Shown here piece by piece: positions 3,522 to 58,200 of a stretch of 64,000 nucleotides of DNA. The stretch is taken from the NCBI RefSeq assembly GCF_006345805.1, contig NC_043000.1, positions 163,060,001 through 163,124,000 of the forward strand. Reading direction: 5' to 3'. Positions within the stretch are counted from its first letter, which is position 1. Each line of letters opens with the position of its first letter. The stretch comes from Octopus sinensis. Lineage: Eukaryota. Position numbers and translations under genes: made by a program. The notes under the pieces were generated by a model, which worked only from the letters and a program-made list of their open reading frames with translations, made no database searches and was not told the origin of the DNA.

Positions 3522-3540
3522 ATATATATATATATATATA

Positions 3541-5310: not shown

Positions 5311-5556
5311 ACGCACGCACGCGGCTAGCTGGCAGAATCGTTAGCGCGTGAATTTAAACTCCTCCGCCGAGGTCGACTTTACCTTTTATCCTTTCGAGGT
5401 CGATACAATAAGTATTAGTTGATCACTGGGGTCGATGTAATCGACTAAAACCATCTCTTTCTATATTTTCGCTGACCTTGCGCCAAAATTTAAAACCATG
5501 TCGTTTGTGTCCCATTTAATTGATGTTGTTAATTTTCAGCGTGTTGATGATGCGTG

Positions 5557-28243: not shown

Positions 28244-28277
<34 letters not shown>

Positions 28278-31200
28278 CCTTAAACTTTTATATTCATGAA
28301 CTTTTCAAACCTATTACATAAACCTGTTACAGAAAATTAAACTACTTTTTATTGTATTTAATCTTGTTTTATTTTAACTTTTTCTTTTATTTTCCTCCTG
28401 CCAAGGTTGACTTTGCTTTCCATCCTTTCGGGATTGATAAAATAAGTACTAGACAATCAACTAGGCAATCAACTAGGCAGTCAACTAGGCAGTCAACTAG
28501 GCAGTCAACTAGGCAGTCAACTAGGCAGTCAACTAGGCAGTCAACTAGGCAGTCAACTAGGCAGTCAACTAGGCAGTCAACTAGGCAGTCAACTAGACAG
28601 TCAACTAGACAGTCAACTAGACAGTCAACTAGACAGTCAACTAGACAGTCAACTAGACAGTCAATAGACAGTCAATAGACAGTCAACTAGACAGTCAACT
28701 AGACAGTCAACTAGACAGTCAACTAGACAGTCAAATAGACAGTCAACTAGACAGTCAACTAGACAGTCAACTAGACAGTCAACTACAGTCAACTAGACAG
28801 TCAACTAGACAGTCAACTAGACGTTCAACTAGACAGTCAACTAGACAGTCAACTAGACAGTCAACTAGACAGTCAACTAGACAGTCAACTAGACAGTCAA
28901 CTAGACAGTCAACTAGACAGTCAACTAGACAGTCAACTAGACAGTCAACTAGACAGTCAACTAGACAGTCAACTAGACAGTCAACTAGACAGTCAACTAG
29001 ACAGTCAACTAGACAGTCAACTAGACAGTCAACTAGACAGTCAACTAGACAGTCAACTAGACAGTCAACTAGACAATCAACTAGACAATCAACTAGACAA
29101 TCAACTAGACAATCAACTAGACAATCAACTAGACAATCAACTAGACAATCAACTAGACAATCAACTAGACAATCAACTAGACAATCAACTAGAAATCAAA
29201 CTAGACAATCAACTAGACAATCAAACTAGACAATCAACTAGACAATCAACTAGACAATCAACTAGACAATCAACTAGACAATCAACTAGACAATCAACTA
29301 GACAATCAACTAGACAATCAACTAGACAATCAAACTAGACAATCAACTAGACAATCAACTAGACAATCAACTAGACAATCAACTAGACAATCAACTAGAC
29401 AATCAACTAGACAATCACTAGACAATCAACTAGACAATCAACTAGACAATCAACTAGACAATCAACTAGACAATCAACTAGACAATCAACTAGACAATCA
29501 ACTAGACAATCAACTAGACAATCAACTAGACAATCAACTAGACAATCAACTAGACAATCAAATAGACAATCAACTAGACAATCAACTAGACAATCAACAG
29601 ACAATCAACTAGACAATCAACTAGACAATCAACTAGACAATCAACTAGACAATCAACTAGACAATCAACTAGACAATCAACTAGACAATCAACTAGACAA
29701 TCAACTAGACAATCAACTAGACAATCAACTAGACAATCAACTAGACAATCAACTAGACAATCAACTAGACAATCAACTAGACAATCAACTAGACAATCAA
29801 CTAGACAATCAATAGACAATCAACTAGACAATCAAATAGACAATCAACTAGACAATCAACTAGACAATCAACTAGACAATCAATCAACTAGACAATCAAC
29901 TAGACAATCAACTAGACAATCAACTAGACAATCAACTAGACAATCAACTAGACAATCAACTAGACAATCACTAGACAATCAACTAGACAATCAACTAGAC
30001 AATCAACTGACAATCAACTAGACAATCAACTAGACAATAAACTAGACAATCAACTAGACAATCAAACTAGACAATCAACTAGACAATCAACTAGACAATC
30101 AACTAGACAATCAACTAGACATCAACTAGACAATCAAACTAGACAATCAACTAGACATCAACTAGACAATCAACTAGACAATCAACTAGACAATCAACTA
30201 GACAATCACTAGACAATCAACTAGACAATCAACTAGACAATCAACTAGACAATCAAATAGACAATCAACTAGACAATCAACTAGACAATCACAACTAGAC
30301 AATCAAACTAGACAATCAACTAGACAATCAACTAGACAATCAAACTAGACAATCAACTAGACAATCAACTAGACAATCAACTAGACAATCAACTAGACAA
30401 TCAACTAGACAATCAACTAGACAATTCAACTAGACAATCAACTAGACAATCAACTAGACAATCAAACTAGACAATCAACTAGACAATCAAATAGACAATC
30501 AACTAGACAATCAACTAGACAATCAAACTAGACCAATCAACTAGACAATCAACTAGACAATCAACTAGACAATCAACTAGACAATCAACTAGACAATCAA
30601 CTAGACAATCAACTAGACAATCAACTAGACAATCAACTACTAGACAATCCAACTAGACAATCAACTAGACAATCAACTAGACAATCAAACTAAGACAATC
30701 AACTAGACCAATACCAACAATAGACAAATCAAAATAGACAATCAACTAGACAAAAATAGACAACTAGACAATCAACAACTAGACAATCAACTAGACAATC
30801 AACTAGACAATCAACTAGAATCAACTCAACTAGACAATCAACTAGACAATCAACTAGACACTCAACTAGACAATCAACTAGACAATCAACTAGACAATCA
30901 ACTAGACAATCAACTAGACAAAACTAGAACCATCAACTGACAATCAACTAGACAATCAATCAACTAGACAATCAACTAGGGACAAATCAACTAGACAATC
31001 AACTAGACAATCAACTAGACAATCAACTAGACAATTCAACTAGACAATCAACTAGACAATCAACTAGACAATCAACTAGAGCCTCTCTGACAAAAAATTT
31101 CAGGCTTTATGCCTAAAGCAGAAAGAATTATTAAAGAAATGATTATAATACAGACTGAAATAAAAAGGAGTTGTAACACTACTTACTAATGAAAAATATT

Positions 31201-34200
31201 TATTGGTATCAAACTCTATAAGAAGAACCGGTCGCTTGTAATGTCGGCTCATGGAAACACACTGGTTGTACAGACGTCCATTACTGAGTGAACCAATCAA
31301 ATCGCTTATGCTTTTTCTTTCAACGCAGATGTCAGGGGTCAAAATGTAATCTCCAACCTGCAAATGAGAAATTTATTGAAGAGCTTTATAGCACAAACAT
31401 TATACATACATATTACACATACATACACGTTATACATAAACATACATACATATCAGGGATGGTTGCCTTCCAAGCAATACATCCACGTTCAACTCCTATC
31501 CAATGCAAGCATTAGCTTTTATAGGCATAGAAATGGTTGTGTGGCTAGGAACCACAAGGTTTTGGGTTCAGTCTCAGTGCACAGCACCTTGGGTAAGTAT
31601 TTCTTGTACTATAGCCCTAGGCAGACCAATACCTTGTGAGTGAATTTGGTACATGAAAACAATATGGAAGCCCATTGTGTGTGTGTGTGTGTGTGCAAAT
31701 AAATATATATTTTATACACATTACATGCATGCAAACATACATACAGACATACATACATGTCAGTGGTGTAATGGTTAGTATGGTTGTCTTCCAAGCAATA
31801 TAGCCAGGTTCAACTCTTAGCTAATGCAGGCATTAGCTTTTATAGGCATAGGCATGGCTAATGCTATGTTTCTGGTAAGGCAGCTGCGCAGCCAAATACA
31901 AACCTCTGTACTTAGCTTTTGTTGACTTGGAGAAAGCCTTTGACAGGGACCCACAGTCTCTTATCTGGTGGTCAATGTGGAAACTAGGGATAGATGAGTG
32001 GTTGGTGAGAGCAGTACAAGCCATGTACAGGGACACTGTCAGTAAGATGAGGGTTGGCAATTAGTACAGTGAAGAATTCAGGGTACAAGTAGGGGTTCAC
32101 CAAGGATCAGTCCTCAGCCCCCTCTTGTTCATCAGAGTCCTCCAAGCAATAACAGAGAAATTTAAGACAGGCTGTCCCTGGGAGCTTCTCTATGCTGATG
32201 ACCTCGCTCTTATAGCTGAATCTCTACCAGAACTAGAAAAGAAGTTCTAGGTATAGAAGTAAGGTCTAGAAATGAAGGGCCTTACAGTTAATCTAGCAAA
32301 AACCAAAGTCTTAGTAAGTAGGAAGGCAGACAAATCACAAATCCATTCAGGTAGATGGCCCTGCTCAATCTGTAGAAAAGCATAGCAGAAACTCCATAAG
32401 AAGTGCCCAGTGTAGGCTATGGACACATAAGAGTTGCAGCAATATCAGAGGAAGGTTAACAGCGAAAATAGCTTTTGTGCATGGAAGATGCAGAGGGGCA
32501 ATAAACACCAAAAATGTACAGAAAATAGACACCATTAACTGCCAGTGGGGTAAGCTAGAGGTAGTAGATAGCTTCCGTTATCTAGGTGACCAGGTTAGTA
32601 TTGGAGGTGAATGCTCTGAGAGCATAGCTGTGAAAATAAGAATAGGCTGGGCTGAGTTCAGAGAACTCCTACCTCTGCTAGCAACAAAGGGCTTCTCTCT
32701 CAAAGTGAAAGGCAGATTGTATGATACTTGTGTTCAAACAGCTCTGCTACATGGCAGTGAAATATGGGCTCCAACAGCTAGGGACATGTGTAGGCTTGAA
32801 AGAAATGAAGCCAGAATGCTTCACTGGATGTGCAATGTCAGTGTGCCTATATGATAGTTGGACATAAGAGGCATCAGATGTGGTATCTAAGAGAAACGAC
32901 TGAGCTGGTATGGTGAGGTGATGTGATGTGATGTGTATGGACAAGGACAGCTGTATAAAGAAGTGCTAACCTTTTTTTGGATGGAACCTGTGGAACTTGT
33001 GGATGGAACCTGTGGTAGAGGTAGACCCAGAAAACAGGGGACGAGGTGGTGAAGCATGATCTTCAAACTTTGGACTTCATGGAAGCAATGACTAGGGACC
33101 AAGACTTTTGGTAATATGTCCTCCTCAAGAAGAGCTGTCAAGCCAAGTGTTTATGTCCTTGTAGCATAGCGGTTCAGCAAAAGATACTGATAGAATAAGT
33201 ACTCATGGTCAATGCTGGTGTCACGTAACTGGCACCCATACCAGTGGCACATAAAAAGCACCTGTTGAGTGTTGAGCCTCACAGAGGCAATGATGAATGA
33301 CCAAGGCCTTTGGCATAATGCCATGCTTGAAAAGAAGACCCATCCAGCCAAGTAAAATCACAGTTGTAGCAGATATTGGTGTTATGCAAATGGCACCCAA
33401 GTCAGTGGCACATAAAAGCACTCATTACACTCTCAGAGTGGTTGGCATTAGGAAGGGCATCCAACCATGGAAACCATGCCAAATATCAGACTGAAGTCTG
33501 GTGCAGTCTTCCAGTTTACCAGCCCTGGTCAAACTATCCAATCCATGCCAGCATGGACAATGAACATTAAATAATGATGATTATTTGTATATATATGAAT
33601 GCAAATATAAATATATATATATATATTTAAAAAAGGAGATGTGGAACACGAGTTGTGATATATAAAAAAAGGAAATGAAGAAAATGCTGACAAAATAATT
33701 TAAGTAAGGGAGAGTGTATTTAATTAGGTGAAAGTTCTTTTTACCGGTTGCGCATTTGTTATGCTTATCAAAAGATATTTTTTAAGAGAGATAGAGTTCC
33801 TTTCTGATAGATTTTTTTCTCTTATCTGACTTTATGTTGGGTTTGCTGTCTCTTATATGTGAAAAAAGAGGCTCCAGAGTTGTTTAAGATTTGCTTGGTT
33901 TCGCACCTAAAATTTCTTGTGGACAATGGTCAATACAATTTTGATTGGTCATTATAAAGGGGTCATTTCTTACCCCACGTCCATAAGGAAGAAAAGAACC
34001 CTGGAAACCCTCACCACCAGAATTACATTAACGAATTTCCCCCTTCAATGAGACACTATACACAACAACTCAACAACTACTCGAATACCTTATTAACAAA
34101 TAAAAGAGGATTCCACTACCAGGATAGACACAACAACATCCACACCACGAGGGGACAACAAGGTAATTTTCACTTTCTCAACTCTCACAATACACAACAA

Positions 34201-37200
34201 GCCCATACCACTCGATACAAGCACCCACGTAGGCCACTCATATCACCACAATCCAACATGACACAAAGAAACACACACCAACACCCGCAATACAGGAACA
34301 CCCCATTCTATCCACAACCACGAACCCGAACCATATTTCACAACAAGGAATATAACAAACACACAGGACCTCTTAACACCAACAGACAACCCCTCTACCC
34401 CAACCATTTTTTAGACACAGCACACAGATACAGGCAAACAAGATAACACAGGACAGGGAAGAGAAACAGAAACTAATTAAAGTCATCAATTTAACCAATA
34501 CAGAACCCAACCCCAACCTTCTCAACTTACTCTCCAAAGGTCTTAAATTCACCCCCCCCCCACGTCCAAACTACTACGAAATGAAGGAAGACATTACAGA
34601 ATTTTGTAGAAAATTGCGACTTAGTGAGGAACTATTCGACCAGCACAATGAGGATGAGTCACTAGCTAGAAATAAAAGCAACTACACCCCACCAAAAGAT
34701 AGAAATAAAATCCTAGACGAATTCTGTGAGCACATTACAAACTTCCCCTACCAACACTTACACAAACCAAAACCCAAACCAAACCTCAACAAGAAAGAGT
34801 GGGAAGAATTAAACAAATTAAAAAATGAAAGATCTATCACCATTAAAGAGGCCGATAAAGGAAGTGCAGTAGTTTTAATGGAGACAGAATACTATATCAA
34901 CTTAGCACTCTCCACCTTGGAAAATGGAACATATTACGAAAAGGCTGAACACTACAATCAACAGAAAATTATGAGAAACTTAAAAACCCTGATCAACCCC
35001 CACAAAGAAGAACTCACTAACAAAGAATTCAACTTCATCACAAATTTCACTAGTAAAACCAGCCTCTTCTACGGTATTCCCAAAATTCATAAAAGCGAAT
35101 TAATAAGTAAGGCATGCAAGGAAGCCACAAACTCTATAATCAATGTCCCCTCACGAAATGACCTCAAATTGAGACCTATAATAGCAGGTCCCGCTTGCGA
35201 AACCCACCGCCTTAGCAACTTCATTGATACCCTTCTCAAGCCCTTCCTCAAACACATTAAAAGCTACATAAGGGACGATCTAGATATGCTCAACCACCTC
35301 CCCAATACACTTCTTGCTGAACAAACCCTGCTAGTAACATTCGATGTAGTTAATCTTTACTCCAACATCCCCCACAACCTAGGAATAGAAGCTATCCAAT
35401 TCTGGCAGGATAATTACTCCAACGAACTCCCACACTGCATCAAAAAGGAATTTATTTTAGAAGGACTCAAATTCATCTTAGAGAATAATTTCTTCACCTT
35501 CAACAACAAATTCTACAGACAGAAATCAGGGACGGCAATGGGAACGAAAACAGCTCCCACTTACGCCAACCTGGTCATGGGATACCTGGAAATCACCCTC
35601 TATAATAACGTTCTTAACCAATTTGGCACCACTCTCCACACACACATAGAGAAGACTGGAAGAGATATCTTGATGACTGCTTCATCCTTTGGCCCGAAAC
35701 CATCGAGAAGCTTAAAGAATTTCACACCCTTATAAATGGGCTCAACACAAACATTATTTTCACAATGGAATACAGCCCTCAACAAATTCCCTTCCTCGAC
35801 ATCCTCATTAAAATTCACAACAAAAAAATAGAAACAGACGTATACTACAAGCCCACAGACTCCAAGCAATACCTCCCTTTCAATTCACCCTAGACACGTT
35901 AAAATTAACATTCCCTACAACTTAGCCAAAAGAATTTGCACTATAGTCTCCAATAAAACCACCCGTCTCTTACATCTACAAGAACTTAAGGACACATTAA
36001 CAAGCAGGGATTACCCCATGTCACTAATTGACAATGGGATCCAACGTGCCCTAAAACTCAGCACACAGGAACTTAGACGCCCTAAACCTGTTACATCGAA
36101 ACCCCATACTCTACCATACATCTCTACACACAACCCCCTCAACAATGAAGCTTTTGACACCATCCTCCAGAACATTCCTGTATTAAAAAAGGACCATAGA
36201 ATGAACCAAATCCTCCTAACACACGAAATAATAAAGAGCAAAAGGCAACCCAAATCATTGAAAACCATCCTAACAAATGCCAAAGTACTGCCAACCACAA
36301 CAACTAAACCCACAGTAAACAAATGCAATAGACCCAACTGTGGTATATGCATCAACCTAATAGAAGGTCCGGAATTCCGTTTTAAACAAGGACAACGTTT
36401 CACAGTAAAACACAACTTCACATGCGCATCAGAAAACCTAGTATATGTCTTAACTTGCTCGGGCTGTAATGAACACTACATAGGCCAAACTAAAAATAGC
36501 CTCTGCCAACGCATGACTGTCCACAGATCCCAAATAAAAATACAGGAATACAGAAAAATAGCACTTAGTGCACATATTGATACCTGTGCCGCACAACTTC
36601 ATCCCAATTTTAGAATCTTTCCCCTCTACAAATTTAAAGACAATGCCACTCATACCCAGCGAATAACCATGGAATCCCACCTTATTAATAAATACAGACC
36701 ACTTCTAAACACATCCCCCTAACACGAACCCACAACAAACACACTTACACCTGCACACACCCTACACACACTTTTACCCAGATATTAACACCATGACACA
36801 CGCAAATATATGGTTCCACACATACACATAATTTGATACGGGTGCAAAACATCCAACACTATTTTTTGGAAATGACTGTAAATATTGACTTCACACAAAC
36901 ACGTTGCTTCCCGATACAGGCACAAGGCCAGCAGAACTATAAATATTGAAAATTGTACCCACACGCACACATATATACAGGTGCGCGCGCCCCAACATAC
37001 ATATAAACTCACACTCACACACGCGCGCGTGCGCACATACATACATATAGCTCTTCCTGTCCTAAACGAACTTACTTATCCAGCTCAAATTCAGTCAAGC
37101 GGAAAATACACTCCTTAACTACGCACTAAAAAGTTATTTAAAATATCCACATGACGTTTACTGACCAGCCTGAACAATAAGAATTTTCAACAACGCTATT

Positions 37201-37690
37201 TTTCGAAAACTCCATACACAACCCACATCAACATTCATTCTAAACATTCACGTGACCTCTCTATTATGACCACATCCACGTGACCTCTTTATTATGACCA
37301 ATAAGAGATTTTAGGCGCGACACTAGCCAAATTTTAACATCTCTGGAGCCTATTTTCTTATCCCAACACCAACTTCCATTCAAACATTCACGTGACCCCT
37401 TTATAATGACCAATCAAAATTGTATTGACCATTGTCCACAAGAAATTTTAGGCGCGAAACCAAGCAAATCTTAAACAACTCTGGAGCCTCTTTTTTTACA
37501 TATAAGAGACAGCAAACCCAACATAAAGTCAGATAAGAGAAAAAAATCTATCAAAAAGGAACTCTATCTCTCTTAAAAATATATCTTTTGATAAGCATAA
37601 CAAATGCGCAACCGGTAAAAAGAACTTTCACCTAATTAAATACACTCTCCCATACTTAAATTATTTTGTCAGCATTTTCTTCATTTCCTT

Positions 37691-37722
<32 letters not shown>

Positions 37723-38640
37723 TATAAATTAGAAAAAAACCCCACCTTTTATGAATTCAATAATGAAAAATTAAATTATACCATTTAGAAAAATTACTAA
37801 GAGTGTAGTGGGTGCTTTTACATGCCACCAGCACGAGGGCCAGTCAGGCAGTACTGGCAACAACATCGCTTGATTGTTTTTTCATGTGCCAGTAAGGTGA
37901 CGCTGGTAACAATCACACTCAAATGATGCTTTTTATGTGCCACCGGCACGGAAGCCAGTTAGCTGCTCTGGCAACGATTACACTCAGATGGTGCTCTTAG
38001 CGATCCACTATCACGGATGCCAGTCATCGAATTTGATTTTGATTTCAATTTCACTTGCCTCAACAGGTCTTCGCAAGCAGAGTTTAGTGTCCAAAGGAGG
38101 AAAAAGTACGCATAAGTGGGCTGGTTACACCCCTGGCATAGGCCATGAGTTATGGTCTCACTTGGCTCACCGGGTCTTCTCAAGCACAGCATACTTCCAA
38201 AAGTCTTGGTCACTAGTCATTGCTTCAGTGAGGTCTAATGTTCGAAGGTCGTGCTTCGCCAGTTCATCCCAGGTCTTCATCCTGGGTCTACCTCTTCCAT
38301 AGATTCCCTCAACTGCTAGGTTGGAGCACTTTTTCACACAGCTATCCTCATCTATTCTCGCCACATGCCTATCCCAGCACAGTTGTCTCTCTTGCACACC
38401 ACATCAGGAGAGACGACTGCGCAGGTATGGGCATGTGGCAAGAATTTTATTTGTTTCGGTCATTTGACTGCAGCCATACTGGAGCACTGCCTTTAGTCGA
38501 GCAAATCAACCCCAGGGCTTATTCATTGTAAGCCTAGTGCTTATTCTATCAGTTTCTATTGCCAAACTGCTAAGTTATGGGTACGGAAACACACCAGCAT
38601 CGGTTGTCAAGCAATGTTGGGGTTACAAACACAGACACAC

Positions 38641-38975: not shown

Positions 38976-39962
38976 GACACAAACTGTGTGTGAGAGAGAC
39001 AGACAGACAGCCTTCTGCACAGTTTCTGTCTACCACATTCATTCAAAAGGCATTGGTTGACCTGGGACTATAGTAGAAGACACCTGTTTAAAGTGCCATG
39101 CAGTAGGGTGCAACCCAAAAATATACAGTTGTAAAGTTAACATAATCATACAGCCATACTTATTATACTTAAAAAGAAGGAAAAGAGATTTCTTCAAGAG
39201 AGCACCCGTGCCGGTGGCATGTAAAAAGAGCCCACTACACTCTTGGAGTGGTTGGTGTTAAGAAAGGCATCCAGCTGTAGAAACCCTGTCAAATCAGATT
39301 GAAACCTGGTGCAGCTCCCCAGCATACCAGTTTTTAGTGAAACCATCTAACCCATGCCAGCATGGAAAACAGACGTTTGATAATGATGAAATGAAGATAA
39401 AAAAACAACTAAAACAGTAAAGAAAGTAAATATTAAAAAAAAAGAATAAGCAGTACTAAAAATATTTTCATTTATTTGAAATAATGTTAAGCTTTTTGTG
39501 GGTGTATACAGGTAGGTGTTTACATGAGTCTTAAGTTCACACCTGTAAATTATTTTTAGAACATGCCAGAAATCCATTGAAACCAGCGTGCTTACCTCTA
39601 ACGTAATAGGTTCTATATGAATACCTCGTCGATGCAACAATGAAGGTAGTTCACTGCGAAATTCACGCATATCAACAATGATCTGAAGTCAAACAAAATT
39701 TGTTTATAAAATCATAAGGTCAGTTTGCAAACAGAAAGAAAAATAACAAAGGAACAACTACAATGTTGCACTGCATCCTTAAAAACTTCCATGCTTCCTG
39801 AGATTCGCCAACACTACACCTGATTTTCTCCCCTCCATACACACACAAGCATGTATCTGACTCATACACTGTTCGCTTTCCAGACATTTGTACATTACTG
39901 CATATGCTTTATACACACTTTCTGACAAGTTGTGGTGCACCTGAGCACTGTATACAACAATT

Positions 39963-39993
<31 letters not shown>

Positions 39994-40256: not shown

Positions 40257-43200
40257 ATAGAAATGATAAGACAACAAAAGAATGAAAGAGACCTCGATAT
40301 TATGTAAATAGAGCATTTTCATAGCATTTTTTTTGATGGCCCGATAACTGATGAGATGCCGGCGTGGGTTTCTGCCACAACATCCAAAACTCAGAGTTTT
40401 ATCATGGCTACCAAATAATTGCCAGTTATTATATTTACAGATATGTGTGTATGTGTATCATCGTTTTTAACATTTGTCTTCCATGCTGACATGGGTTTGA
40501 GAGTTCCAACAACTTCACAGAGTGTGCCAAGTGCCTTGTTTTTCCATGGCACCAGCACTAGTGAAGTAATTTCCAAGACAAAAAGAAGTCCTTTTGACTG
40601 AGTGGGAGAGTTGTAGAGAGGTTGATGGCTTTATGTCTGGTGTTGAGAGACTACAATATGATAGAGAGACCGAAATAGGTGCCTTGCTACAGAGAAGCTA
40701 CATGGTTATTCTGCATTATATAGGTGTGGGTAGTGGGAGAAGCTGTGGAGAGGTAAAAATGTTGGTGATGAAGTGTCACAGAGCCAAAAGAGATATCCAT
40801 GCCATTTCATCCAATGTTGTATCATTCCACCGATCCACTGCCATGGACAGGGAATTTGATCCAAAACCAGCTTAGGGAGGACCCAAACTCAGAGTGCAGA
40901 CACTAAGACAAACACCACAAAACGTTTTATCTGACACTAAGAATTCAACTAATATAATGCCATACAAAGTGTGCGTGCATGTGGTGGTGGTCATCATTAC
41001 CATATAAGGTTTGTCTTCCATGTTGTCACAGGCTGAATGTTTCAACAGAATCCAATGAGCCAGAGTACGGCATAAAGCTCCATGTCTACTTAGGTCTGGT
41101 TTCTATGACTGGATGACCTTCCTCATGCCAACCATTTTACTGTACTGGCTGTTTCTTTTTCCTTGAGGTTGTTATGTAACTAACACAACATAAAAACCCC
41201 TCAACTGAATGAGAATGTAGTAGAGAGAGCAAGATTGTCTAATGGCAAGATTTACATATAAAACACTTACTACCATTAGTCTTGGACAGATTTTTAAGTG
41301 GTCACTTAATGCAACTTGAATTTTGTACCACTCACATTCCAAAGGATGGCAATGCTAATTACACATAGATTCATTCTTGTAACTGTCTTAAATACAATTT
41401 ATTTTTAAAATCTTCACATTTATAATTATATAGTTGTTAGTTGTCGGAGCACTGCATCCTTCAAAACTTCCATGCTTTCTGAGATTCACCAACACTACAC
41501 CTGATTTTCTCCCCTCCATACACACGCAAACATGTATCTGACTCATACATTGTTCGCTTTCCAGACATTTGTACATTACTGCATATGCTTTATACGCACT
41601 TTCTGACAAGTTGTGGTGCACCTGAGCACTGTATACGATAATTTCATAATTATTATATATTATATATATGATACAGATAAGGAAATAATTTATTCTCAAA
41701 TGCAGAATAATGCTGTTAGAACAGCAGGAATGGCATAAAGTATCCATATTTTGCAGAAAAATTGTCAGAAGCCAGCCATGAGACTTGAACTCACATCCCT
41801 GCAATTAGCGGTCAAGTGCTTTACCAATGAAGCCAAACTGCCCACTGACAGATTAATCTGCTCCTTTTGAACTTATAATCTAGCTTATAAGCACTTGACT
41901 GGTAATCACAGGGATGCGAGTTCGAGTCTTATAGCTGGCTGCTGACAAATTTTTCCACGAAATATGGATACTTTATCCGGTTCCTGCTGTTCTATCGGCA
42001 TTATTCAGCATTTGAGAATAAATTATTTCCTTATCTGTATCTTACATTTCAACACTTCTAAAAGCAAACTTTGTTTACATTTACCATAATTATATATGTA
42101 TTATTCAACAGCCACTTCAACATGACGGTCTAGCCGAAGGGATTCAACTGCAATCTTTTTAACCCCAAGAGAGCATCTCCTCTAGCTGATTAAAAACGCA
42201 AAGCAGCATCTGATAAATTCCAAGTAGGGGAGCAAACCCTTACCACCTTCTAACGACAGGACCAGCAGACCAGTCCTGGACACCTCGTACTAGAAATGGC
42301 AGTAGCTTGCCTCTGCTTGCAACATATACAGATATATATATATATTTCAAGTGAACACACAGTCACTGATTTTGCAACAAGCAAAAATGCTGGTTCTAAA
42401 ATCTCTCTAGGAGATCAACGCAGTAGTTGTACTGACAAGTAATATTCAGAGACACTTCAACGTGGCTGTCCATTCAAATGGACTCTACTGTGATTTTTTT
42501 ACCCCCTCTTTGCAATTTATCGGATGCAGCTCAGCATCATTAACCAACTAGAGATGTCCTCTTGGGGTAAAAGATGAACATCCATGTTGAAGTGGATATA
42601 TATGTCGCCCCGACTGGCCTCCGTGCCGGTGACACGTGAAAGCACCATCCGTTCGTGGCGGTTGCCAGCTTCGCCTGGCCCCCGTGCCGGTGGCACGTAA
42701 AAAGCACCATCCGTTCGTGGCCGTTTGCCAGCTCCGTCTGGCACGTAAAAAGCACCCACTACACTCACGGAGTGGTTGGCGTTAGGAAGGGCATCCAGCC
42801 GTAGAAACACTGCCAGATCAGACTGGGCCTGATGCAGCCTTCTGGCTTCACAGACCCCAGTTGAACCAGCCAACCCATGCTAGAATGGAAAGCAGACGCT
42901 AAATGATGATGATGATGATGATATATATTGCAAGCAGTGGCGAGCTACTGCCATCTCTAGCCAACAAGGTGTCCAATCCTGAAGAGCGGCAGAAATAGCC
43001 TGAAACCAGGACTGGTCTGCTGGTCCCATCGCTAGAAGCAGGTAGGGGTTCACTCACCTGCTCGCAATTAATGGGATGCAGCTCTTCATCGTTAATCAGG
43101 TAAAAATGATGTCCTCTTGGAGTTAAAAAACTGCAGTAGTTTGTTCGAACAGACAGCCATGCTGAAGTGTCTCTGAATATTACTTGATAGTACAACTACT

Positions 43201-46200
43201 GCATTGATCTCTCAGAGAGATTTTAGAAATAGCATTTTTGCTTCTATATGTACTCTTGGGATTAATTCTTGATACAAAACATCAAATTTGAGATACTTGA
43301 AAATGTTAGAGTAGCCCCTTTTGCTGGTCCACGGAGGGTTAAGTGACTATGAAAATATCTATTCTCCTAATATGATATGTGAGGAGGTGGTACTGAAATT
43401 TTATAACACTGATTTAACATAATTTGATAGGAGATGATAGATGCTCTTGGTGTAAATGGTAACATATGCACTCGAAATGTGATAGAGATAAGGTTTGAAT
43501 GTTACTGGAGGGTTTCTTCCCCAAATATCCTGAAACTGAAATTCTTGTTAGACAACATATTTACAGTATATTTTGTTAGAATATCCTCTGCTCTAATCTC
43601 AAGTGTGCCTTTTGGATTTAGTTATGTTCCCACATCCTTTCTGGGACTTCACACTCTGGTGTGCGCTCTCTCTCTCTCTCCCTCAATACTTCTGCTCTAT
43701 GTATATTTTGGATGACACCAACAAAACTAAAAATAATAATTTTAACACTAGTACAATGCTATAAATTTAGTGAGGAGAAAAATTAATTCAACCAAAATAT
43801 TTGACTGGTACTCTTTTACTTAATTTGATCAACCATAAAACAATCAACTTTGGCATAATTAAAACTCAAAGTATAATGAGTTATAAACCAAATATCATAA
43901 AGAATTTTATCCTTTGATTCCACTGATTCCACTAAACACTTTACTGATGAGTGCTACAAAAGTGGTTCAAGGAACGGTCAATCAACCGGTTTCTACTCCT
44001 AGACTGTTCCTTATTCTATCAAGGTGGGCAGGATGAAAAGTAAAGTCGATCTCCAGTGGCTTTAAGCCCAAAATGTAAAGGGAGATAACAATGCATGCGT
44101 TTTGTTAACCCTCTACTCTCATCTAATTAGTCTTGATAGTAATTATTTCTTTTTGATCCCAGCAGGATGAGAGTATTTCATATAGGGACTGAACATAAAG
44201 CAAAATAACTTTATAAAAAATAAATGTGCCATTTTTAAAGCCTAGCCAGGCTCATGAGCCCGGTTTCCCGGTTTCTATGGCGTATGTGTTCCCCAGCTGG
44301 ACGGGACGCCAGTCCATCACAGCGTTACTCATTTTTGCCAGCTGAGTGGACTGGAGTAACGTGAAATGAAGTGTTTCGCTCAAGAACAAAACGCGTTGCC
44401 CGGTCCAGGAATCGAAACCACAATCTTACGATCATGATGATGACACCCTAACCACTAAGCCACATGCCTCCATAAAACAACTTTATAGGGTGAGCTAGTT
44501 AGTGAAATTCATACCTACTTTAATAACTTAGCCACAATGCTTCATTGTTTTAATAGATCTTAGTAATTATTTTACCAATCATTAGAACATAAAGGAATAT
44601 AGTGCAACATTGCAAGACATTTAATCACTCATCCTTGCATTTCTACCTCCACAAGCTTCTTAATAAGGTATAAACACAAACCAGAGGATGTGATAGAGAA
44701 TAAGAATCATGGGATTTTATAAGATTTCTCTACAAAGATTGACCATACTATTGAAGCAAGATGACCTGATATGATTAAAGAGGACAAAAGAAGCAGTTTA
44801 AGATCACAGACTTTGCAATACCAAATGAGAACAGCGAAATTTATACTCAGAAGCATAAGTCAAAAGAAATGGTGCTAAGCATTTTGTCTGCTGCACTAAC
44901 GATTCTGCCAGCTCACTGCCTTAATAGTAGTAGTAATAGTAGTAGTAGTAGTAGTAATAATAATAATAATCATGATTTCAAATTTTGGCACAGAGCCAGC
45001 AGTTTTTGTGGAAGTCAATTAAATTGCAAACCCCACATAGTACTTGATTGGTGCTTATTTTATTGATAGTAAAAAAATGAAAAGTGAAGTCAACTTCTCA
45101 GCATTTGAAGTGAGAATGTAAAGCCAGAAGAAATGCTGCTAAGCATTTTGTCCAGTCTGCTAATGGTTCTTCTAGCTTGCCGCCTTAACAATAATAATAA
45201 CACCATCTAACATTCGCACAAGAACAATTTTTGTTTTTTCACATGGTGATTTTCGTAAAAGAAAAAAAGAAAGTACCAGTTCTAAACCAGAACTTAATTT
45301 CATGAAACAGAAGCACAAAAAAAAAACAAAGCTGCAAGACATTTCTATTTGGTACTGTATTGATTTTGTTACCCTATAACAAACACATCAAATAAATACA
45401 TTAATTTGTATACATAACAAAAAACAAACCTTGTGATTTTCTGCTTTCACTTCCATTCCTCCTTTACGAGAAGAAGTAGGGGCTTGGAGTGCAGAAACTG
45501 CATGCAAGTTAGGATCATTTTCAAGCTTCCCATCTCTCTCTTCTGGGATTACCATTAGCTGTGAATGGAAAGTGGTTAATGATAAGACATTGATATCACA
45601 GGGATATGAGGGTGGATGAGTGAGTGTCAGTTGTTGTTTAGACCTAGACCTGTCCAATCGATCAATCCTGAAAGGATAAAAATAAAAAAAAGGATATGGT
45701 CCCAGCAAGATATGAACTGAGTACACACAGAGACATGACTTAAACATCCACAAGCATTTTGTTCAGCACTCAACTATTTCAGTGACTTGACTGTCATGTA
45801 ATAATAACAACTGCTTCTAATGAAGACACAAGGACAGTCATTTTGAGAGTAGAGGGTTAGTCGATATCAACCAAGTATTTGACTAATACTTTGTTGACCC
45901 CACAGGGATGAAAGGCAAGGCTGACCCAAGTGGTATTTGAATTCAGAATATAAAGAACAAGAACAATATATTGCCAGGTACTGATTCCGACACAAATGAC
46001 TTAAGCAGCTCACTGTCCTTTTATGTAATAATAATGGTTTCACACTTTAGTAGAGAGTCAGAAAGGTTAAGGAGAAGGAGAAGTTGATTATATTGATCCT
46101 AGTCAAGGCGGCGAGCTGGCAGAAATGTTAGCACGCCGGGCGAAATGCGTAGCCATATTTCGTCTGCCGTTACGTTCTGAGTTCAAATTCCGCCGAGGTC

Positions 46201-52200: not shown

Positions 52201-55200
52201 CATTCATTCACATACCCCTTCACATATATATATATATATATATGCATGCCTTTCCTCCCTTGGACACACAAAGACCTGTTGAGGCAAGTGAAGTCGATAT
52301 CAAACCTCATCCGACGACAGGCACCCATGCCAACCCCCCTTTGCTTGCAAAGACCTGTTGGGGCAAGTGAAATCGAAATCGAACCAATCCTATGACTGGC
52401 ACCCGGCAGATGCCAGGACCCCTGGACTAGTGGTACGTAAAAAGCACCATCCGAATCGTGGCCGAAGCCAGTGCCGCCTCGACTGGCTTCTGTGCCGGTG
52501 GCACGTAAAATGCACCAATCCGACCGTGGCCGATGCCAGCCTTGCTTGGCACCTGTGCGGGTGGCACGTAAAAAGCACCCACTACACTCACGGAGCGGTT
52601 GGCGTTAGGAAGGGCATCCAGCTGTAGAAACATTGCCAGATAAGACTGGAGCCTGGTGCAGCCTTCTGGCTTCCCAGATCCCCGGTCGAAACGTCCAACC
52701 CATGCTAGCATGGAGAACGGACGTTAAACGATGATGAGGATAATGATATATATGAGATGTCATCGGGTGTACCACAGGGATCTGTCCTTGGTCCCCTCCT
52801 GTTTGTGGCATACATTAATGACATAGATGCCAATTTAAAGAATGCCACAGTATTGAAATATGCAGACGACATCAAGCTGTACCTTGAAATCAAGAGGACT
52901 GATCCTGATGTCTACAACTCTTTCCTGCAATCAGACCTAGACACAGTGCAGCAATGGATCACAGACTGGCAACTGAAACTGGCTGTGGACAAGTGTACCA
53001 CCATGCATTTTGGGAGAAAAAACCCTGCGTCCACATACTCCCTCCACAACACTGATATCAAGAAATCCTCTTGCGAGCGTGACCTAGGCATCACTGTCAG
53101 CAGTGATTTGCGTTGGACAAAGCATATCTCTAAAATTGTCAAGAAGGCCGAGGGTGTCTTGGCATCACTCAGCAAGACTTTTGTTAGCCGCTCTCCAGCC
53201 ATCTATTTAAAACTGTATACAGCTATGGTACGACCACACTTGGAATTCGCATCATCAGTTTGGAATCCCTATCTTGCTCAGAACATTGACCTCCTGGAAT
53301 CTGTCCAGAGACGTGCAACCAAACACATACCCTCCATCAGACACCTACCATATTCTGAGCGCCTTGTTTCCCTGGACATGGATTCACTGAAGCTCCGGCG
53401 TCTGGCGACGGACTTGGTAAACACCCACAAGGTTATCAACCACCTCGCCAACAACAACACTGAACACCCTTTTGATCTCCATGTGTCTAACACACGTGGA
53501 CATGCCTACAAAGTCAGAAAACAGCACAGCTCCCATGACTTTCGGAAACATTTTTTCACGCTCAGGGTTGCTGAAGCGTGGAATAAACTGCCTGCATCAG
53601 TTGTTGACTGCCATGACACTGCATCCTTTAAGGCCCTCATGCTTCCCGAAATCCGTCGAAACTACACCTGATTATATATACACTTTAGATGAGTTGTAGT
53701 GCACCTGAGCACTGTACACAATTATTATTATTATTATTATATATATATATACCAACCATTTTATGGGGTGTAGCAGATGTACTTCTTATGGCACCAATAC
53801 AAGATAAGCTATCATACTCTTGGCAAGACTAGAGCCCACCACACTTGAGTGGGAGAATAGGAGAGAGGTTGATGACTTTTGGGAAAATGTTGAGAGAAGT
53901 TAAAGTATGACTGGAGGACCATTTTAGTGTTGGTGTCATAAAAATAGCACCTGCTACACTCAGTAAAATGTTTGACAAATCAAACAGATACAATGCAAGA
54001 TCAGTGCTGGTACAAAGAAAATATGATGTCTGTGAACTGTGGCATTATTGAGAGTGAGAGGGAGAGAGACACGCACACAAATAAAATAGATGCACATCAA
54101 CAAACAAAATGGTGAATTATCTATAAAACAAGCAGAAAAAGAATGGGAACATATGACAGAGGTTGGTAGGCAAATGAAATGATATTCAATGAAACAAACG
54201 ACCAATTGAGCTCCTGACCTCCCTCAGTTGACTACAAGTTCGGTCATCTTCAGCTACAATTAAGATTTTTCCTCTCCCAAAGTCGGGATCCAGTTCAGCA
54301 TTCTCATTCTGAATCTCAGCCAGGATTTCTGACAAACCAGTCCATTTGGGTGGGATTTCCAAGTCTGGAACATTCTCTAGGAGGTGAAACAGATATAGGC
54401 ATTAGTGAAAAGAATAAAAGTCAAGAGATGCCGTAGAAGACTCATCTATCATCTACTTAAAAGCTACAGAATTGGATTTGTTCTGTTAGATTCAAAACAT
54501 TTAATGTAACGAACATAAAAAACTTAATTTGGCAAAAGACAAAATTAGCTCAAAGTCTATTATATTCTTAATCGTTTTGAGAAGTTGGTTGTTCATTTGT
54601 TTTACATCCATTTATCCATGTTATCATGGGTTAGATGAAGTATATAATGAAGCTTTCATTTTACAACAGGATGTCACTAATTCTTGCCTTTTTCTAAGGA
54701 ATGGACTTTTGGTTCCACTTGTTTATGAAAGCATACAGCCACAAGGTGATGTGTCAGGAGAAAATGTCAACAAATGTCACCATAATTTTGGTCAAAGGTA
54801 AGATGTGGTATGTAAACACAGACACAAACGCACACACACACACACACATACAGGTATGTATGTGTGCATGCATACATACACATACACATACTCACACAAA
54901 CATTATGGACTTCCACAATGTTTCCATCTACTGATACAAAACTAGAGAACTTGCTCAAGGTGCCACTCAGTAAGACACTCCAGACATGATCCAGTTTTAT
55001 TCCGTCTCCTGAGCAACATAAAAGCTTGAATTTGCAATCTTTATTCTTACTACAATATTAGGACATGTGCACATATAGATATACTGCACTTGAGAAGGGA
55101 TAAGGAGCATGTTCTGAAGAAGGTGCTAGAGTTTGAGGTTGTAGCAATAGCCATTTTAGCCATTTTGAAATGTGGTGCGAATTGGCAATATGACGTAATG

Positions 55201-58200
55201 TTGTATTGCCGAAGAATTATCATTTTCGTTTTTTTCCATTGGTTAATATAACTGCTCATATAAAGATTCTAAAAGTTTCGTAAAGAATATCTGTCATGAA
55301 TTTCGATTCTTTTTAGTCAAGTTGAGCAGTTATAAAAACCCTGGATTTTGGAAAATAAATGAGTGTTCGTTTGGTAGTCATTCAACTCCACGTCACTCAC
55401 TCTTTTGGAGACATCAGTAAATTTTTATGCCATGTCTAAGTTAATCACAAATCTATTTTGATTTGTTGGTTAGCATATTAGATAGAAAGAAGAAATTAGC
55501 TAAGGAATTTAAAGTCGTTTTTCTTCACGACGAAGTTATCTTTCTTACTGTAAAAAAATATAAAATGTTATATTTATATAATAAAAATAATCAAAAAGAA
55601 AATGTTTCTCTTCACGTTTGTTTTTCAACTGAGCATAGATAAATATGCATTTCTGTAATCTTTGTTTTATGTTTCTTATAGCGGTTTAAAGGACACGATT
55701 AAAATATTCAACATACATGGTCGTTGATGTAGCGTTCCATGCGTATATGTCTATATGACGTTATAACTGCAGTTAGGGTTAAAGATATAATGATAACACT
55801 TGAGTATAAGTGACGTTGAATCATTATATTTTCCCTTACTCAGAGGAAAGCCTAAATAAATAATATAACTTAAGAGAAAGCTTAGGGTAGAATAAACCGA
55901 GAGCCGCCATAGGAAAAAGTAAATGGACAGTGAAAACGAGGTAGACCGAGGAAAATGTGGAGGGGACAGGTGGTGGAGGAGATTGAGAGGGTTGACTTGA
56001 GAAGGGAGGACACCCAAAACCGAGCAAGATGGTGAGACGGTATGAGGGCAGTTGCTATGACATTCAGGTAGATCCGGCCACCCACGTTAACGGGGACAAA
56101 ACCAGGATTCAAAATGATGGATGATAATGATAAATGAGAATGCAGAATCCTCTGTGCAGCAAAAAATGGAGATGGAATATAAGACCCTTAAATACTTTGG
56201 TCAATGGCCAGGCAATACACTGACCCTACAAGCTATTTCTTAACAAAAGTTAGAATGTAAAGAAAAGTTTTACAAGCCTTACCATTTTCTCTGTTTTCAG
56301 ATGCAACACCTTTCAGTTTAGAATCTTCCTTCTTTTTAGAGCTTTTGTTAGTTTTGTAAACCCTCATCTTTGAGTTCTGTAAATCAAAATACCAAAAATA
56401 CATATCTGTACCATCTATTATATTTTTTGGAAAGTGACCAAAAAAGACATATATTTAAATATAACATAAAGATATATACATTTATGAGTTATATAAATAT
56501 TTCTTGTAATATCTGAAAATTTTGAATTCAGTATATAATTTCATCTCTATGATCAAAGTTCCAATTCCAGCAAAGATCAACTTCTACTTTCCGTGCTCCA
56601 AGATCAATAAAATAGGCATCTGCAATGCAATGAAGTTGAATTAATAATACACACACACAGATATGTGTATGTGTATGCTAGTATTTGTGTATGTATATAG
56701 ACAGGTGTACTGCTGCTTTATATGTTTTAACAGATGAGGAGTGCTAAAAGTAGGGGGCGGGGAATGAAAAACAAAAGAAAACAAAACAAAGAACATGAAA
56801 AATGCATAAAGGAAAATTTGGTTTTAAAAGTAAATAAATTTATTTCATATAGCTTCAACCATTGGTTACACATTTGTCCATCTGTTTACTTCAACTATGA
56901 AATGTAGAAATGCAAAATTATCTCAGGCTTTTTCTACAGTGATGTTTTCAAATATTTCTTTAGTTTCCATATGAGCGTGATCGTTGCCAGAGCAACAAGC
57001 TGGCCTCCATGCCGGTGGCACGAAAAAAAACACCATTCGAGCGAGATCGTTACCTGCATCGCCTTACTGGCACTTGTGCTGGTGGCATGTGAAAAAACAT
57101 TCGAGTGAGGTCGTTGCCAGTGCCGCTGGACTGGCTCCTGTGCAGGTGGCACATAAAAAGCACCATTTGAGCATGGCTGTTGCCAGTACCGCCTGACTGG
57201 CCCTCATGCCGGTGGCACATAAAAGCACCCACTACACTCTCAGAGTGGTTGGCATTAGGAAGAGCATCCAGCTGTAGAAACTCTGCCAGATCAGAGTGGA
57301 GTCTGGTGCAGCCATCTGGTTCGCCAGTCCTCAGTCAAATCGTCCAACCCATGCTAGCATGGAAAGCGGACGTTAAACGATGATGATGATGAATGCTTCC
57401 ATGACTATGATATTTATATGTTAATTGAGCTGATACAAAAATGATATAATGCTATATAGGACTATATGGCAACCGTGGAAAATTGTGAGGTCATTCTGAC
57501 AAATGGATTCAGTGCAAATACTGACATGATGAAACAAGATTCCACATGATAATTTTCCTTGGCATTTGTCAAATGATGTTCCCTAAATTTTTAATTGCTA
57601 TTACAGCCTTAAGTCATAGTGTCATCTGCATTGAGATATTCAATATAAACACCTTTAGATTCATAAAACACATACTGTCATCCTGTCTGAATTGACTTTG
57701 TTTGATGGGATGTCAATATACTTTAATCCCCCGTTCTATGAACTGTTGTTTCTTTGTTGAATAATATCCAGAAGCCATGTTGCATTACCAGTAAAATTTG
57801 TTGTGAAAAATCTTCAGAGATCATTGTCATAAATATCACTGCAATCGTTGTACATCTCAACTCTTTTTTGCCAATGAATACTTGTCAAAATATAAGGAAT
57901 CCACCTAAAACTACTCTTGCACATCTTCAAAAGTCTGTGAAGTATTTGCAGAACTAAGCCTTCATTTATATTCCACATACATGTAGTGCTTCTTGTCATC
58001 CTTGAATCTGCTTCAAGTAGGCTCTTCACAAACTCAAGGTTGCTTTCAGCCCTCAAAATTGGCCTACAACAATCTTCATCATGTATTGAGTCCTTATCAA
58101 CAATAGTGACAATAATGATAAGGCATATATTTACTGTTTAAACCCCACATTTCTTAATTACAATAAAGATTTTCTTTGTTTTGCTTTTGTTTTGTCTCTC

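What the first reader, a model, noticed from the sequence alone, without database searches (positions are those of the whole stretch)
41669..42042. Fold-back element made of two back-to-back tRNA-like Pol III units
Seen: the left arm read on the minus strand gives GGGCAGTTTGGCTTCATTGGTAAAGCACTTGACCGCTAATTGCAGGGATGTGAGTTCAAGTCTCATGGCTGGC (A-box, anticodon-like arm, B-box), then TTTTT about 10 nt later. The right arm gives the same unit on the plus strand with a shortened D arm and a CT-GGT-AA loop (Thr-like), also followed by TTTTT. Both arms share a further ~95-bp tail ending GTATC. The centre has a small palindrome (CAGATTAATCTG) and TA flanks both ends. It has MITE geometry but SINE/tRNA content, fitting neither standard class. 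Inference: a DNA-transposon-like carrier of divergent Pol III promoters or TFIIIC sites, making short tRNA-like RNAs.
Basis: partly seen in the sequence, partly recalled or inferred. Interest (0 to 1): 0.7.

Follow-up and report, generated by a model that had tools for sequence, protein, structure and literature searches.

The report
Decayed fold-back of tRNA-like units
A 372-bp hairpin-shaped repeat in an octopus genome is built from two inverted, decaying copies of a tRNA-derived unit; it is probably a MITE-like fold-back or a local inverted duplication, and I found no sign that it is a working tRNA gene pair or a new class of element.

Summary
Window 41670-42041 is a 372-bp imperfect palindrome. 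Its arms match at 87% over the outer ~150 nt and perfectly over the last 34 nt. A 12-bp palindrome lies within 1 nt of the midpoint.

Each arm reads outward as a tRNA-like head, then T5 9-10 nt later, then an 87-nt trailer ending GTATC. The left head is clearly tRNA-derived but degenerate: Rfam tRNA scores 24.7 bits against a cut-off of 29, ARAGORN is silent, and no stable cloverleaf forms. The right head lacks the acceptor stem and the D loop.

The window is Octopus DNA. I found no second copy, paired or solo, in about 150 kb of reachable sequence (about 127 kb of it Octopus). No searchable collection holds unannotated octopus DNA, so whether this is a repeat family could not be tested.

The left-hand "TA" flank is the microsatellite tail of a LINE 3' fragment, so it is not evidence of a target-site duplication. 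Neither the arms nor the whole element has a target-site duplication above chance. The internal T5 and the missing tails argue against two ordinary SINEs.

My ranking:
- Copy of a low-copy MITE-like fold-back built from a tRNA-derived unit: about 0.45.
- One-off local inverted duplication: about 0.3. Three other fold-backs lie in the same window.

RNA production is untested.

The parts
41670..42041 (.). Whole fold-back element (372 bp), GATACAGATAAGG...CCTTATCTGTATC
   Evidence: Inverted repeats; arm alignment; single hairpin of -128 kcal/mol, z = -23.8
41670..41843 (-). Left arm. Read on the minus strand from the centre outward: tRNA-like head, T5, 87-nt trailer
41770..41842 (-). Full-length but degenerate tRNA-like head. 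A-box-like TGGCTTCATTGG (with C at the A14 position), canonical B box GTTCAAGTC
   Evidence: Rfam tRNA 24.7 bits, model positions 1-71, cut-off 29. ARAGORN calls it only at the relaxed ps90 threshold, with an unreliable anticodon. No stable cloverleaf, z = +1.6
41757..41761 (-). T5 run (Pol III terminator-like), starting 9 nt after the left tRNA-like 3' end
   Evidence: Read directly from the sequence
41844..41880 (.). Asymmetric 37-nt centre. It contains the 12-nt palindrome CAGATTAATCTG (41849-41860) within 1 nt of the element's midpoint
   Evidence: chance about 0.001
41881..42041 (+). Right arm: 5'-truncated tRNA-like head, T5, 87-nt trailer
41881..41940 (+). Partial tRNA-like head. It starts at tRNA position 8 (TAGCTTA), has the D loop deleted so that the D stem becomes the palindrome GCTTATAAGC, and has no 5' acceptor strand. 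B box GTTCGAGTC
   Evidence: Rfam tRNA 14.7 bits over model positions 8-63, which covers 41881-41932; the remaining bases to 41940 were read by eye (reading)
41950..41954 (+). T5 run, starting 10 nt after the right tRNA-like 3' end
41670..41703 (+). Left terminal 34 nt, identical to the reverse complement of 42008-42041
   Evidence: 0 mismatches on both strands
42008..42041 (-). Right terminal 34 nt, a perfect inverted copy of 41670-41703
41433..41669 (+). Context, not part of the element. A 5'-truncated LINE 3'-UTR fragment with an (ATT)n(AT)n tail that ends exactly where the fold-back begins
   Evidence: 94% identical sister copy at 39768-39981, and the LINE 3' end at 53600-53751. Homology to the O. 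vulgaris LINE 3' repeat starts at 41432
41416..41432 (+). ACATTTATAATTATATA, the upstream copy of a candidate long direct repeat (possible target-site duplication) around the composite 41433-42076
   Evidence: the 11-mer ATAATTATATA occurs only twice in the window, at 41422 and 42086. 4% of random window pairs at the same spacing score as well
42077..42096 (+). ACATTTACCATAATTATATA, the downstream copy of that candidate direct repeat, 35 nt beyond the fold-back's right end

Best explanation
The element is an old, decaying fold-back repeat.

Ancestral unit: about 175 bp that already looked like a worn tRNA gene. It had a tRNA-derived head with A and B boxes, an oligo-T stop 9-10 nt downstream, and about 87 nt of trailer.

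How the palindrome formed: the unit was duplicated in inverted orientation around a short central palindrome. This gave a hairpin-shaped DNA with about 150-bp inverted arms.

What this copy most likely is: a member of a low-copy, non-autonomous MITE-like (fold-back) family. Such a family would move as DNA through its conserved ~34-bp ends. This copy landed at the end of the TA-rich tail of a LINE fragment.

Role of the tRNA-like parts: they are passengers and relics. The left one keeps a formally complete Pol III unit that could yield an unstable RNA of about 85-90 nt. The right one keeps only a B box.

Shown: the palindrome, the tRNA derivation, the T5 runs, the perfect ends, the central axis, and the nature of the left flank.

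Inferred: mobility as a unit, the transposase-type mechanism, and any transcription.
For: - Sharp ends with 34/34 identical terminal bases against 84% identity over the next 116 positions. The naive probability is about 0.003. After discounting the 9 of 18 substitutions that are CpG decay, it is about 0.05.
- The 12-nt palindrome sits at the geometric centre, with a chance probability of about 0.001. The whole element folds as one hairpin, z = -23.8.
- tRNA derivation is significant for the tRNA model alone.
- The arms cannot be ordinary SINE copies. They carry an internal T5. They have no simple-repeat tail of their own: the left microsatellite belongs to the LINE fragment, as its sister copy shows. 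They have no per-arm target-site duplication. No solo arm exists in about 150 kb.
- The position next to (TA)n, with TA on both sides of 41669-42042, fits a TA-targeting DNA element.
- A second complete palindrome in the same window is also flanked by TA repeats: 3538-3990, 453 bp, 98%.
- MER6 in mammals is a published case of a MITE that carries SINE-derived sequence (PMC6887750).
Against: - Only one copy is known. None was found in the window, in 63 kb from three Octopus genomes, in one other fetched locus, or in any collection scan. Those collections hold essentially no unannotated octopus DNA, so this is weak evidence.
- The TA flank is trivial inside a (TA)n tail, and the terminal bases of 41669/42042 (T and T) are not complementary.
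- No transposase gene or second element shares the ends.
- The ends match no transposon superfamily signature that I can name. This comparison is from memory, not a test.
- A candidate 17/20-nt direct repeat encloses the LINE fragment, the fold-back and 35 further nt. A simple later insertion of a MITE does not explain that arrangement.
- Three other local inverted or duplicated structures in the window show that inverted duplication happens here without transposition.
Confidence: 0.45

Rival explanations
1. One-off local inverted duplication. A single tRNA-derived unit (a pseudogene or an old retroposon copy) lay next to the LINE tail. After a break, hairpin-primed repair or replication template switching at the short palindrome CAGATTAATCTG copied it backwards. 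The resulting palindrome never moved and has decayed in place.
For: - The mini-palindrome lies at the axis.
- No other copy was found anywhere reachable.
- The same 64 kb holds three more such structures. The first is 1302-1453 / 1827-1978, 152 nt at 100% identity, whose identity runs past a dispersed repeat into unique flanks; that marks it as a local duplication. The second is a 453-bp zero-spacer palindrome at 3538-3990. The third is three local copies of a ~340-nt unit, one of them inverted, at 42098-43243, directly beside this element.
- The T5 and trailer are retained in both arms, as expected for a DNA-level copy.
Against: - The 34 perfect terminal bases against about 84% identity further in are not expected from uniform decay (probability 0.003 to 0.05).
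- The 27-28 nt on either side of the central palindrome are unrelated, which a continuous fold-back copy does not predict.
- If the 17/20-nt direct repeat is a true target-site duplication, both arms arrived after the target was intact.
Confidence: 0.3
2. By-product of a single LINE-mediated insertion. Reverse transcription began on a Pol III or read-through RNA of the tRNA-like unit. The cDNA snapped back on itself, or the template was already palindromic. Synthesis then jumped to a LINE RNA 3' end. Together these steps produced LINE fragment, tail, fold-back and 35 nt inside one target-site duplication.
For: - The candidate 17/20-nt direct repeat encloses exactly 41433-42076, and its upstream copy ends at the LINE fragment's 5' junction.
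- The LINE tail abuts the left arm's outer end to the base.
- The order of segments fits end-to-end template jumping. That last point rests on my knowledge of LINE reverse transcriptases and was not tested here.
Against: - The arms differ by 12.7%, while the LINE fragment differs from its sister by only 5.6%. That is only marginally compatible with arms born identical in that same event.
- A snap-back copy has no reason to stop at GTATC rather than run into the 35 nt.
- The direct repeat is AT-rich, and 4% of random window pairs score as well. A rival duplicate of the same motif lies inside the tail itself, at about 41646-41660.
Confidence: 0.1
3. Chance head-to-head pair of two independently inserted copies of a tRNA-derived SINE.
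For: - Octopus genomes are rich in tRNA-derived SINEs (Ohshima and Okada 1994, cited in PMC4824008).
- The right arm looks 5'-truncated, as retroposed copies often are.
Against: - No solo arm exists in about 150 kb, even with a profile search, whereas the abundant SINE of this window has more than 10 copies.
- Neither arm has a simple-repeat tail or a target-site duplication.
- Both arms carry T5 straight after the head, which would stop Pol III before the trailer.
- The 12-nt palindrome sits exactly at the midpoint.
Confidence: 0.05

Closest known systems
MITEs that carry SINE-derived sequence, e.g. mammalian MER6/MER6A (PMC6887750)
   Same: Small, non-coding, inverted-repeat geometry with SINE-type content inside. 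The SINE part is a passenger of a DNA-type element.
   Different: MER6 has mariner-derived ends and a single internal V-domain piece, and it is a proven multi-copy family. Here the whole of each arm is the tRNA-like unit, no transposon-derived ends can be recognised, and no family has been shown.
tRNA-derived SINEs of octopus (OK, OR1, OR2; Ohshima and Okada 1994, cited in PMC4824008)
   Same: A tRNA-related head with A- and B-box-like motifs followed by a tRNA-unrelated body, in the same host genus.
   Different: The arms have an internal T5, no LINE-type tail, no target-site duplication and no other copies nearby, and they are arranged as an inverted pair.
Inverted SINE pairs such as inverted-repeat Alus (from my own knowledge)
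   Same: Two SINE-like units in opposite orientation that would form a long double-stranded RNA stem if transcribed through. Such a stem would be a likely substrate for editing or dicing enzymes.
   Different: Those pairs are independent insertions from an abundant family, each with its own tail and duplication. They are spaced arbitrarily and have no central axis palindrome.
Fold-back (hairpin-primed) inverted duplications at short palindromes; for DNA palindromes in general see PMC7999016 (seen, title and abstract only)
   Same: A short palindrome exactly at the axis, a decayed centre, and other local inverted duplications nearby.
   Different: The arms are not continuous up to the axis, and the ends are better conserved than the rest.

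Membership tests
Functional tRNA gene | Scores above the curated tRNA model threshold and is called by tRNA finders | tested here: not met
   Rfam tRNA scores 24.7 bits (left) and 14.7 bits (right) against a gathering score of 29. There is no hit at gathering level. ARAGORN at default settings finds nothing here. It calls the left arm only at ps90, with a doubtful CTA anticodon.
Functional tRNA gene | Stable cloverleaf with paired acceptor and anticodon stems | tested here: not met
   The left arm's minimum free energy is -15.4 kcal/mol, no better than shuffled sequence (z = +1.6). The anticodon stem pairs at 3 of 5 positions in both arms. The right arm lacks the 5' acceptor strand.
tRNA-derived SINE | Internal Pol III promoter (A and B boxes) in a tRNA-related head | tested here: met
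   Left arm: A-box-like TGGCTTCATTGG and a canonical B box. Right arm: a canonical B box but only the start of an A box. The match is by motif only; activity was not tested.
tRNA-derived SINE | 3' end with an A-rich or simple-repeat tail, or a tail shared with a partner LINE | tested here: not met
   Both arms end at GTATC. The microsatellite on the left belongs to the neighbouring LINE fragment. The right flank is unique sequence. The trailer has no similarity to any LINE in the window or the fetched loci.
tRNA-derived SINE | Each copy flanked by its own target-site duplication | tested here: not met
   The centre-versus-flank alignments score no better than shuffled sequence.
tRNA-derived SINE | Body free of Pol III terminators, so the whole unit is transcribed | tested here: not met
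   A T5 run lies 9-10 nt after the head in both arms.
tRNA-derived SINE | Dispersed, multi-copy | tested here: inconclusive
   No further copy exists in the 64-kb window or in 63 kb from three Octopus genomes. Whole genomes could not be searched.
MITE / fold-back DNA element | Terminal inverted repeats, small size, no coding capacity | tested here: met
   The arms are about 150 nt long, with 34 perfect terminal bases. The element is 372 bp. The only ORF crossing it has no Pfam match.
MITE / fold-back DNA element | Target-site duplication of fixed length or sequence | tested here: inconclusive
   TA lies on both sides of 41669-42042, but the left one sits inside a (TA)n tail. Nothing longer exceeds chance.
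MITE / fold-back DNA element | Many copies with the same ends and different flanks | not testable with these tools
   No collection available here holds unannotated octopus DNA. The best unnamed reverse-transcriptase hits are at most 70% identical, so the negative scans say little.
MITE / fold-back DNA element | Autonomous partner sharing the terminal sequence | tested here: not met
   The 19-mer end with up to 3 mismatches occurs only at the two ends of this element. It is absent from the octopus loci. The search covered only about 150 kb.
Local fold-back duplication | Short palindrome at the axis, and unique in the genome | tested here: inconclusive
   The axis palindrome is present. Uniqueness holds only for the sequence I could reach.

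The most novel reading that the evidence does not exclude
Octopus genomes may carry a family of DNA-mobilised fold-back elements whose entire arms are Pol III gene-like units: a tRNA-derived promoter plus its terminator. Transposition would then scatter pairs of divergent TFIIIC/Pol III sites and short tRNA-like transcripts. That would be a hybrid between the MITE and SINE kinds that fits neither class.
Probability: 0.1. Interest if true: 0.65.

Novelty: new variant of a known kind. Interest (0 to 1): 0.3.

Why it matters
If this is a family, it would show a tRNA-derived, Pol III-type unit turned into the arms of a DNA-type fold-back element. That would be a route by which B boxes (TFIIIC sites) and long hairpins spread without reverse transcription.

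In cephalopods, long double-stranded RNA stems matter as possible substrates for their very active RNA editing. That link is inference and was not tested.

If it is a single local duplication, the element is ordinary genomic debris. The more useful point would then be that this 64-kb stretch holds four separate fold-back structures. That deserves a genome-wide count and a check against raw reads.

Tried and rejected
Searches for further copies, all negative or uninformative:
- Exact and 3-mismatch pattern searches, blastn with word size 7, and nhmmer with single-sequence and two-arm profiles, run on the window and the fetched loci. Only the element itself matched.
- A JGI metagenome scan with the terminal 22-mer gave one hit, which was a chance match inside a coding-looking bacterial contig.
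- Two viral-contig scans and two prokaryote-genome scans gave nothing.
- A six-frame peptide query of the whole element against 5.8 billion proteins gave nothing. This is uninformative because the database appears to hold no ORF-called octopus contigs.
- I sampled octopus DNA through reverse-transcriptase proteins. This yielded 21.6 kb of O. bimaculoides, 20.7 kb of O. sinensis and 20.6 kb of O. vulgaris, none with a copy.
- One further locus turned out not to be a close relative of Octopus (no similarity to the window).
- Two O. bimaculoides proteins and two window ORFs were not on record.

Literature:
- Searches for tRNA-like MITEs, octopus MITEs and the element's own sequence strings found no description of it.

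Ideas considered and dropped:
- An 'empty-site' test that joined the two flanks found no paralogue.
- Extension of the left-flank homology into the element was not found.
- A Thr isotype was rejected because the two arms disagree and the stem is unpaired.
- From memory, the ends match no hAT, piggyBac, PIF or Helitron signature.
- I dropped a chronology argument (arms older than the LINE fragment) as too weak: 12.7% against an upper bound of about 11%.
Full report
**Observation**

Window 41670-42041 is a 372-bp imperfect palindrome.
- The repeat finder reports arms of 100 nt at 89% and 65 nt at 85% complementarity.
- Aligned from the outer ends inward, the arms are identical for 34 nt, then 85% (positions 35-100) and 82% (positions 101-150) identical. 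The innermost 27-28 nt on each side are unrelated.
- As single-stranded DNA it folds into one hairpin of -128 kcal/mol. Shuffled sequences average -35 kcal/mol, z = -23.8.
- The 12-nt palindrome CAGATTAATCTG (41849-41860) is centred 1 nt from the element's midpoint. Only 25 G/C-containing 12-nt palindromes occur in the 64 kb, so the chance of that coincidence is about 0.001. The symmetry axis is therefore real.

**Anatomy of an arm**

Read from the centre outward, each arm has three parts: a tRNA-like head, a T5 run 9-10 nt after its 3' end, and an 87-nt trailer ending GTATC. The left arm is read on the minus strand and the right arm on the plus strand.

Rfam's tRNA model matches the left head end to end at 24.7 bits. 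It matches the right head from model position 8 at 14.7 bits. Both are below the curated 29 bits. The tool's E-values are multiplied by 4227 families. For the tRNA model alone, the left arm is about 2e-4 per window. Only one other tRNA-like hit exists in the window, at 31757-31828. The derivation from tRNA is therefore solid.

These are not tRNA genes:
- ARAGORN is silent at default settings.
- At a relaxed threshold it calls only the left head, and in a different anticodon register.
- The left head folds no better than shuffled sequence (z = +1.6).
- The anticodon stem pairs at 3 of 5 positions in both arms, so it was already degenerate before the arms separated.
- The right head lacks the 5' acceptor strand and the D loop.
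The 'Thr-like' label is therefore not supported.

Both B boxes keep every invariant base. The left arm also has an A-box-like motif, so on paper it is a complete type-2 Pol III unit with a terminator.

**Host and surroundings**

The window is animal DNA of about 37% G+C, full of LINE and Penelope-like fragments. The reverse transcriptases are 76-84% identical to Octopus bimaculoides, O. sinensis and O. vulgaris proteins. The window shares SINE copies at 85-94% with loci from those genomes. It is therefore an Octopus genome.

The left flank, 41433-41669, is a 5'-truncated LINE 3'-UTR fragment on the plus strand. Its (ATT)n(AT)n tail ends exactly at the fold-back.
- A sister copy at 39768-39981 is 94% identical.
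- The parent-type LINE 3' end at 53600-53751 shows the same tail.

No direct repeat above chance flanks either arm or the whole element.

One candidate long direct repeat exists. ACATTTATAATTATATA (41416-41432) ends at the LINE fragment's 5' junction. ACATTTACCATAATTATATA (42077-42096) lies 35 nt past the fold-back.
- The shared 11-mer occurs nowhere else in the window.
- However, 4% of random window pairs at the same spacing score as well, and a similar motif lies in the tail itself.
- If it is real, the LINE fragment, the fold-back and the 35 nt all arrived after the target was intact.

**Is it a family?**

I could not find out. No second copy, paired or solo, is present in any of these:
- the window;
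- 63 kb sampled from three Octopus genomes;
- one unrelated locus;
- a profile search over all of the above;
- the metagenome, viral and prokaryote scans, or a six-frame peptide search.

The large collections evidently lack unannotated octopus DNA. The best unnamed relatives of an abundant octopus LINE are only 70% identical or less. These negatives therefore bound the density only loosely, at less than about one copy per 60-130 kb.

**What the single copy says**

Against two ordinary SINEs meeting by chance:
- The family is not abundant here, whereas the common SINE of the window has more than 10 copies.
- Neither arm has its own tail or duplication.
- Both arms carry T5 directly after the head, which would end a Pol III transcript before the trailer.
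- The axis is marked by a palindrome.

For a mobile fold-back:
- The ends are sharp and perfectly conserved for 34 nt, against 84% identity further in. The probability is about 0.003 naively. It is about 0.05 once the 9 of 18 substitutions due to CpG decay are set aside.
- The site is TA-rich.
- Another complete palindrome in the window (3538-3990) is also bounded by TA repeats.

For a one-off local duplication:
- The window contains a 152-nt, 100% identical inverted pair whose identity runs beyond a dispersed repeat into unique sequence (1302-1453 / 1827-1978).
- Three local copies of a ~340-nt unit, one of them inverted, lie immediately to the right of this element (42098-43243).
- None of these structures has copies elsewhere in reach.

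A third possibility is a single LINE-mediated event with a snapped-back cDNA and template jumping. It would explain the long direct repeat and the exact abutment of the LINE tail. It fits the arm divergence only marginally: 12.7%, against 5.6% between the LINE fragment and its sister.

**Verdict**

The structure is real, and its content is tRNA-derived. I rank the explanations as follows:
- Copy of a low-copy MITE-like fold-back built from a tRNA-derived, Pol III-gene-like unit: 0.45.
- Local fold-back duplication: 0.3.
- LINE-coupled by-product: 0.1.
- Chance SINE pair: 0.05.

In every case this copy is decaying. The right unit is incomplete, and production of tRNA-like RNAs is unproven.

A MITE that carries SINE-derived sequence has a published precedent in MER6 (PMC6887750). 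Even the favoured reading is therefore a variant of a known kind. One whole-genome BLAST of an arm, plus the orthologous site in a sister species, would settle the matter.

Noticed in passing
window 3538-3990: A 453-bp zero-spacer palindrome, 98% complementary. The outer arms are 100% identical and the mismatches lie near the TTCGAA centre. It is bounded by (TA)13 on the left and ATATATAT on the right. It is not tRNA-like, and no other copy exists in the window or the fetched loci. It could be a young fold-back element, a fresh duplication or an assembly artefact.
   Followed up: partly
window 1302-1453 and 1827-1978: A 152-nt inverted pair at 100% identity with a 373-nt spacer that includes a TA/TG microsatellite. 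Arm positions 34-122 belong to a dispersed retroposon 3' end (copies at 27449, 51232, 38445 and 25618). The identity extends about 30 nt beyond that repeat on both sides, so this is a local inverted duplication or an assembly artefact.
   Followed up: partly
window 42098-43243: Three local copies of a ~340-nt unit, two direct and one inverted, at 74-88% identity. They surround an inserted SINE copy (42606-42928). The unit also contains its own internal hairpin (42158-42230 pairs with 42503-42572). It was not found elsewhere. It starts directly after the candidate direct repeat at 42077-42096, one base (42097) further on.
   Followed up: partly
window 42606-42928, plus 2589-2929, 15392-15639, 16340-16520, 24934-25232, 52441-52753, 57076-57392, 58469-58710 and others: An abundant SINE-like family of about 320 bp, with more than 10 copies in 64 kb. 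It has 62-nt internal tandem sub-repeats and an (ATG)n tail. It is shared with O. sinensis and O. bimaculoides loci at 81-94% identity. Rfam's tRNA model does not recognise it, and it is unrelated to the fold-back.
   Followed up: partly
window 31757-31828 (+): A tRNA-Gly(TCC)-like sequence called by ARAGORN, scoring 27.8 bits in Rfam (below 29). It has a T4 run about 12 nt downstream and lies about 60 nt upstream of a reverse-transcriptase fragment that starts at 31890. It is probably a tRNA pseudogene or a retroposon head.
   Followed up: partly
window 39768-39981 and 41449-41663; L004 10690-11396: Two short LINE 3'-UTR retroposon copies 1.7 kb apart are 94% identical, the closest repeat pair in the window apart from the perfect palindromes. 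In O. vulgaris the homologous ~100-nt piece is tandemly repeated inside a LINE 3' UTR.
   Followed up: partly
window 5554-7952 (+): A LINE reverse-transcriptase ORF (587 aa, followed by 195 aa) is 65-70% identical to elements annotated in oyster, amphioxus, shrimp and carp. It is 84% identical to an O. bimaculoides copy. That is unusually even similarity across phyla and hints at horizontal spread of this LINE lineage.
   Followed up: no
window 34581-36722 (+): A Penelope-like retroelement with a reverse-transcriptase ORF and a separate ORF carrying a GIY-YIG nuclease domain. The reading frame is broken between them.
   Followed up: partly
window 28000-38000: A strongly strand-asymmetric stretch, with GC skew down to -0.38 and AT skew up to +0.35. 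It covers the Penelope-like element and its neighbours.
   Followed up: no
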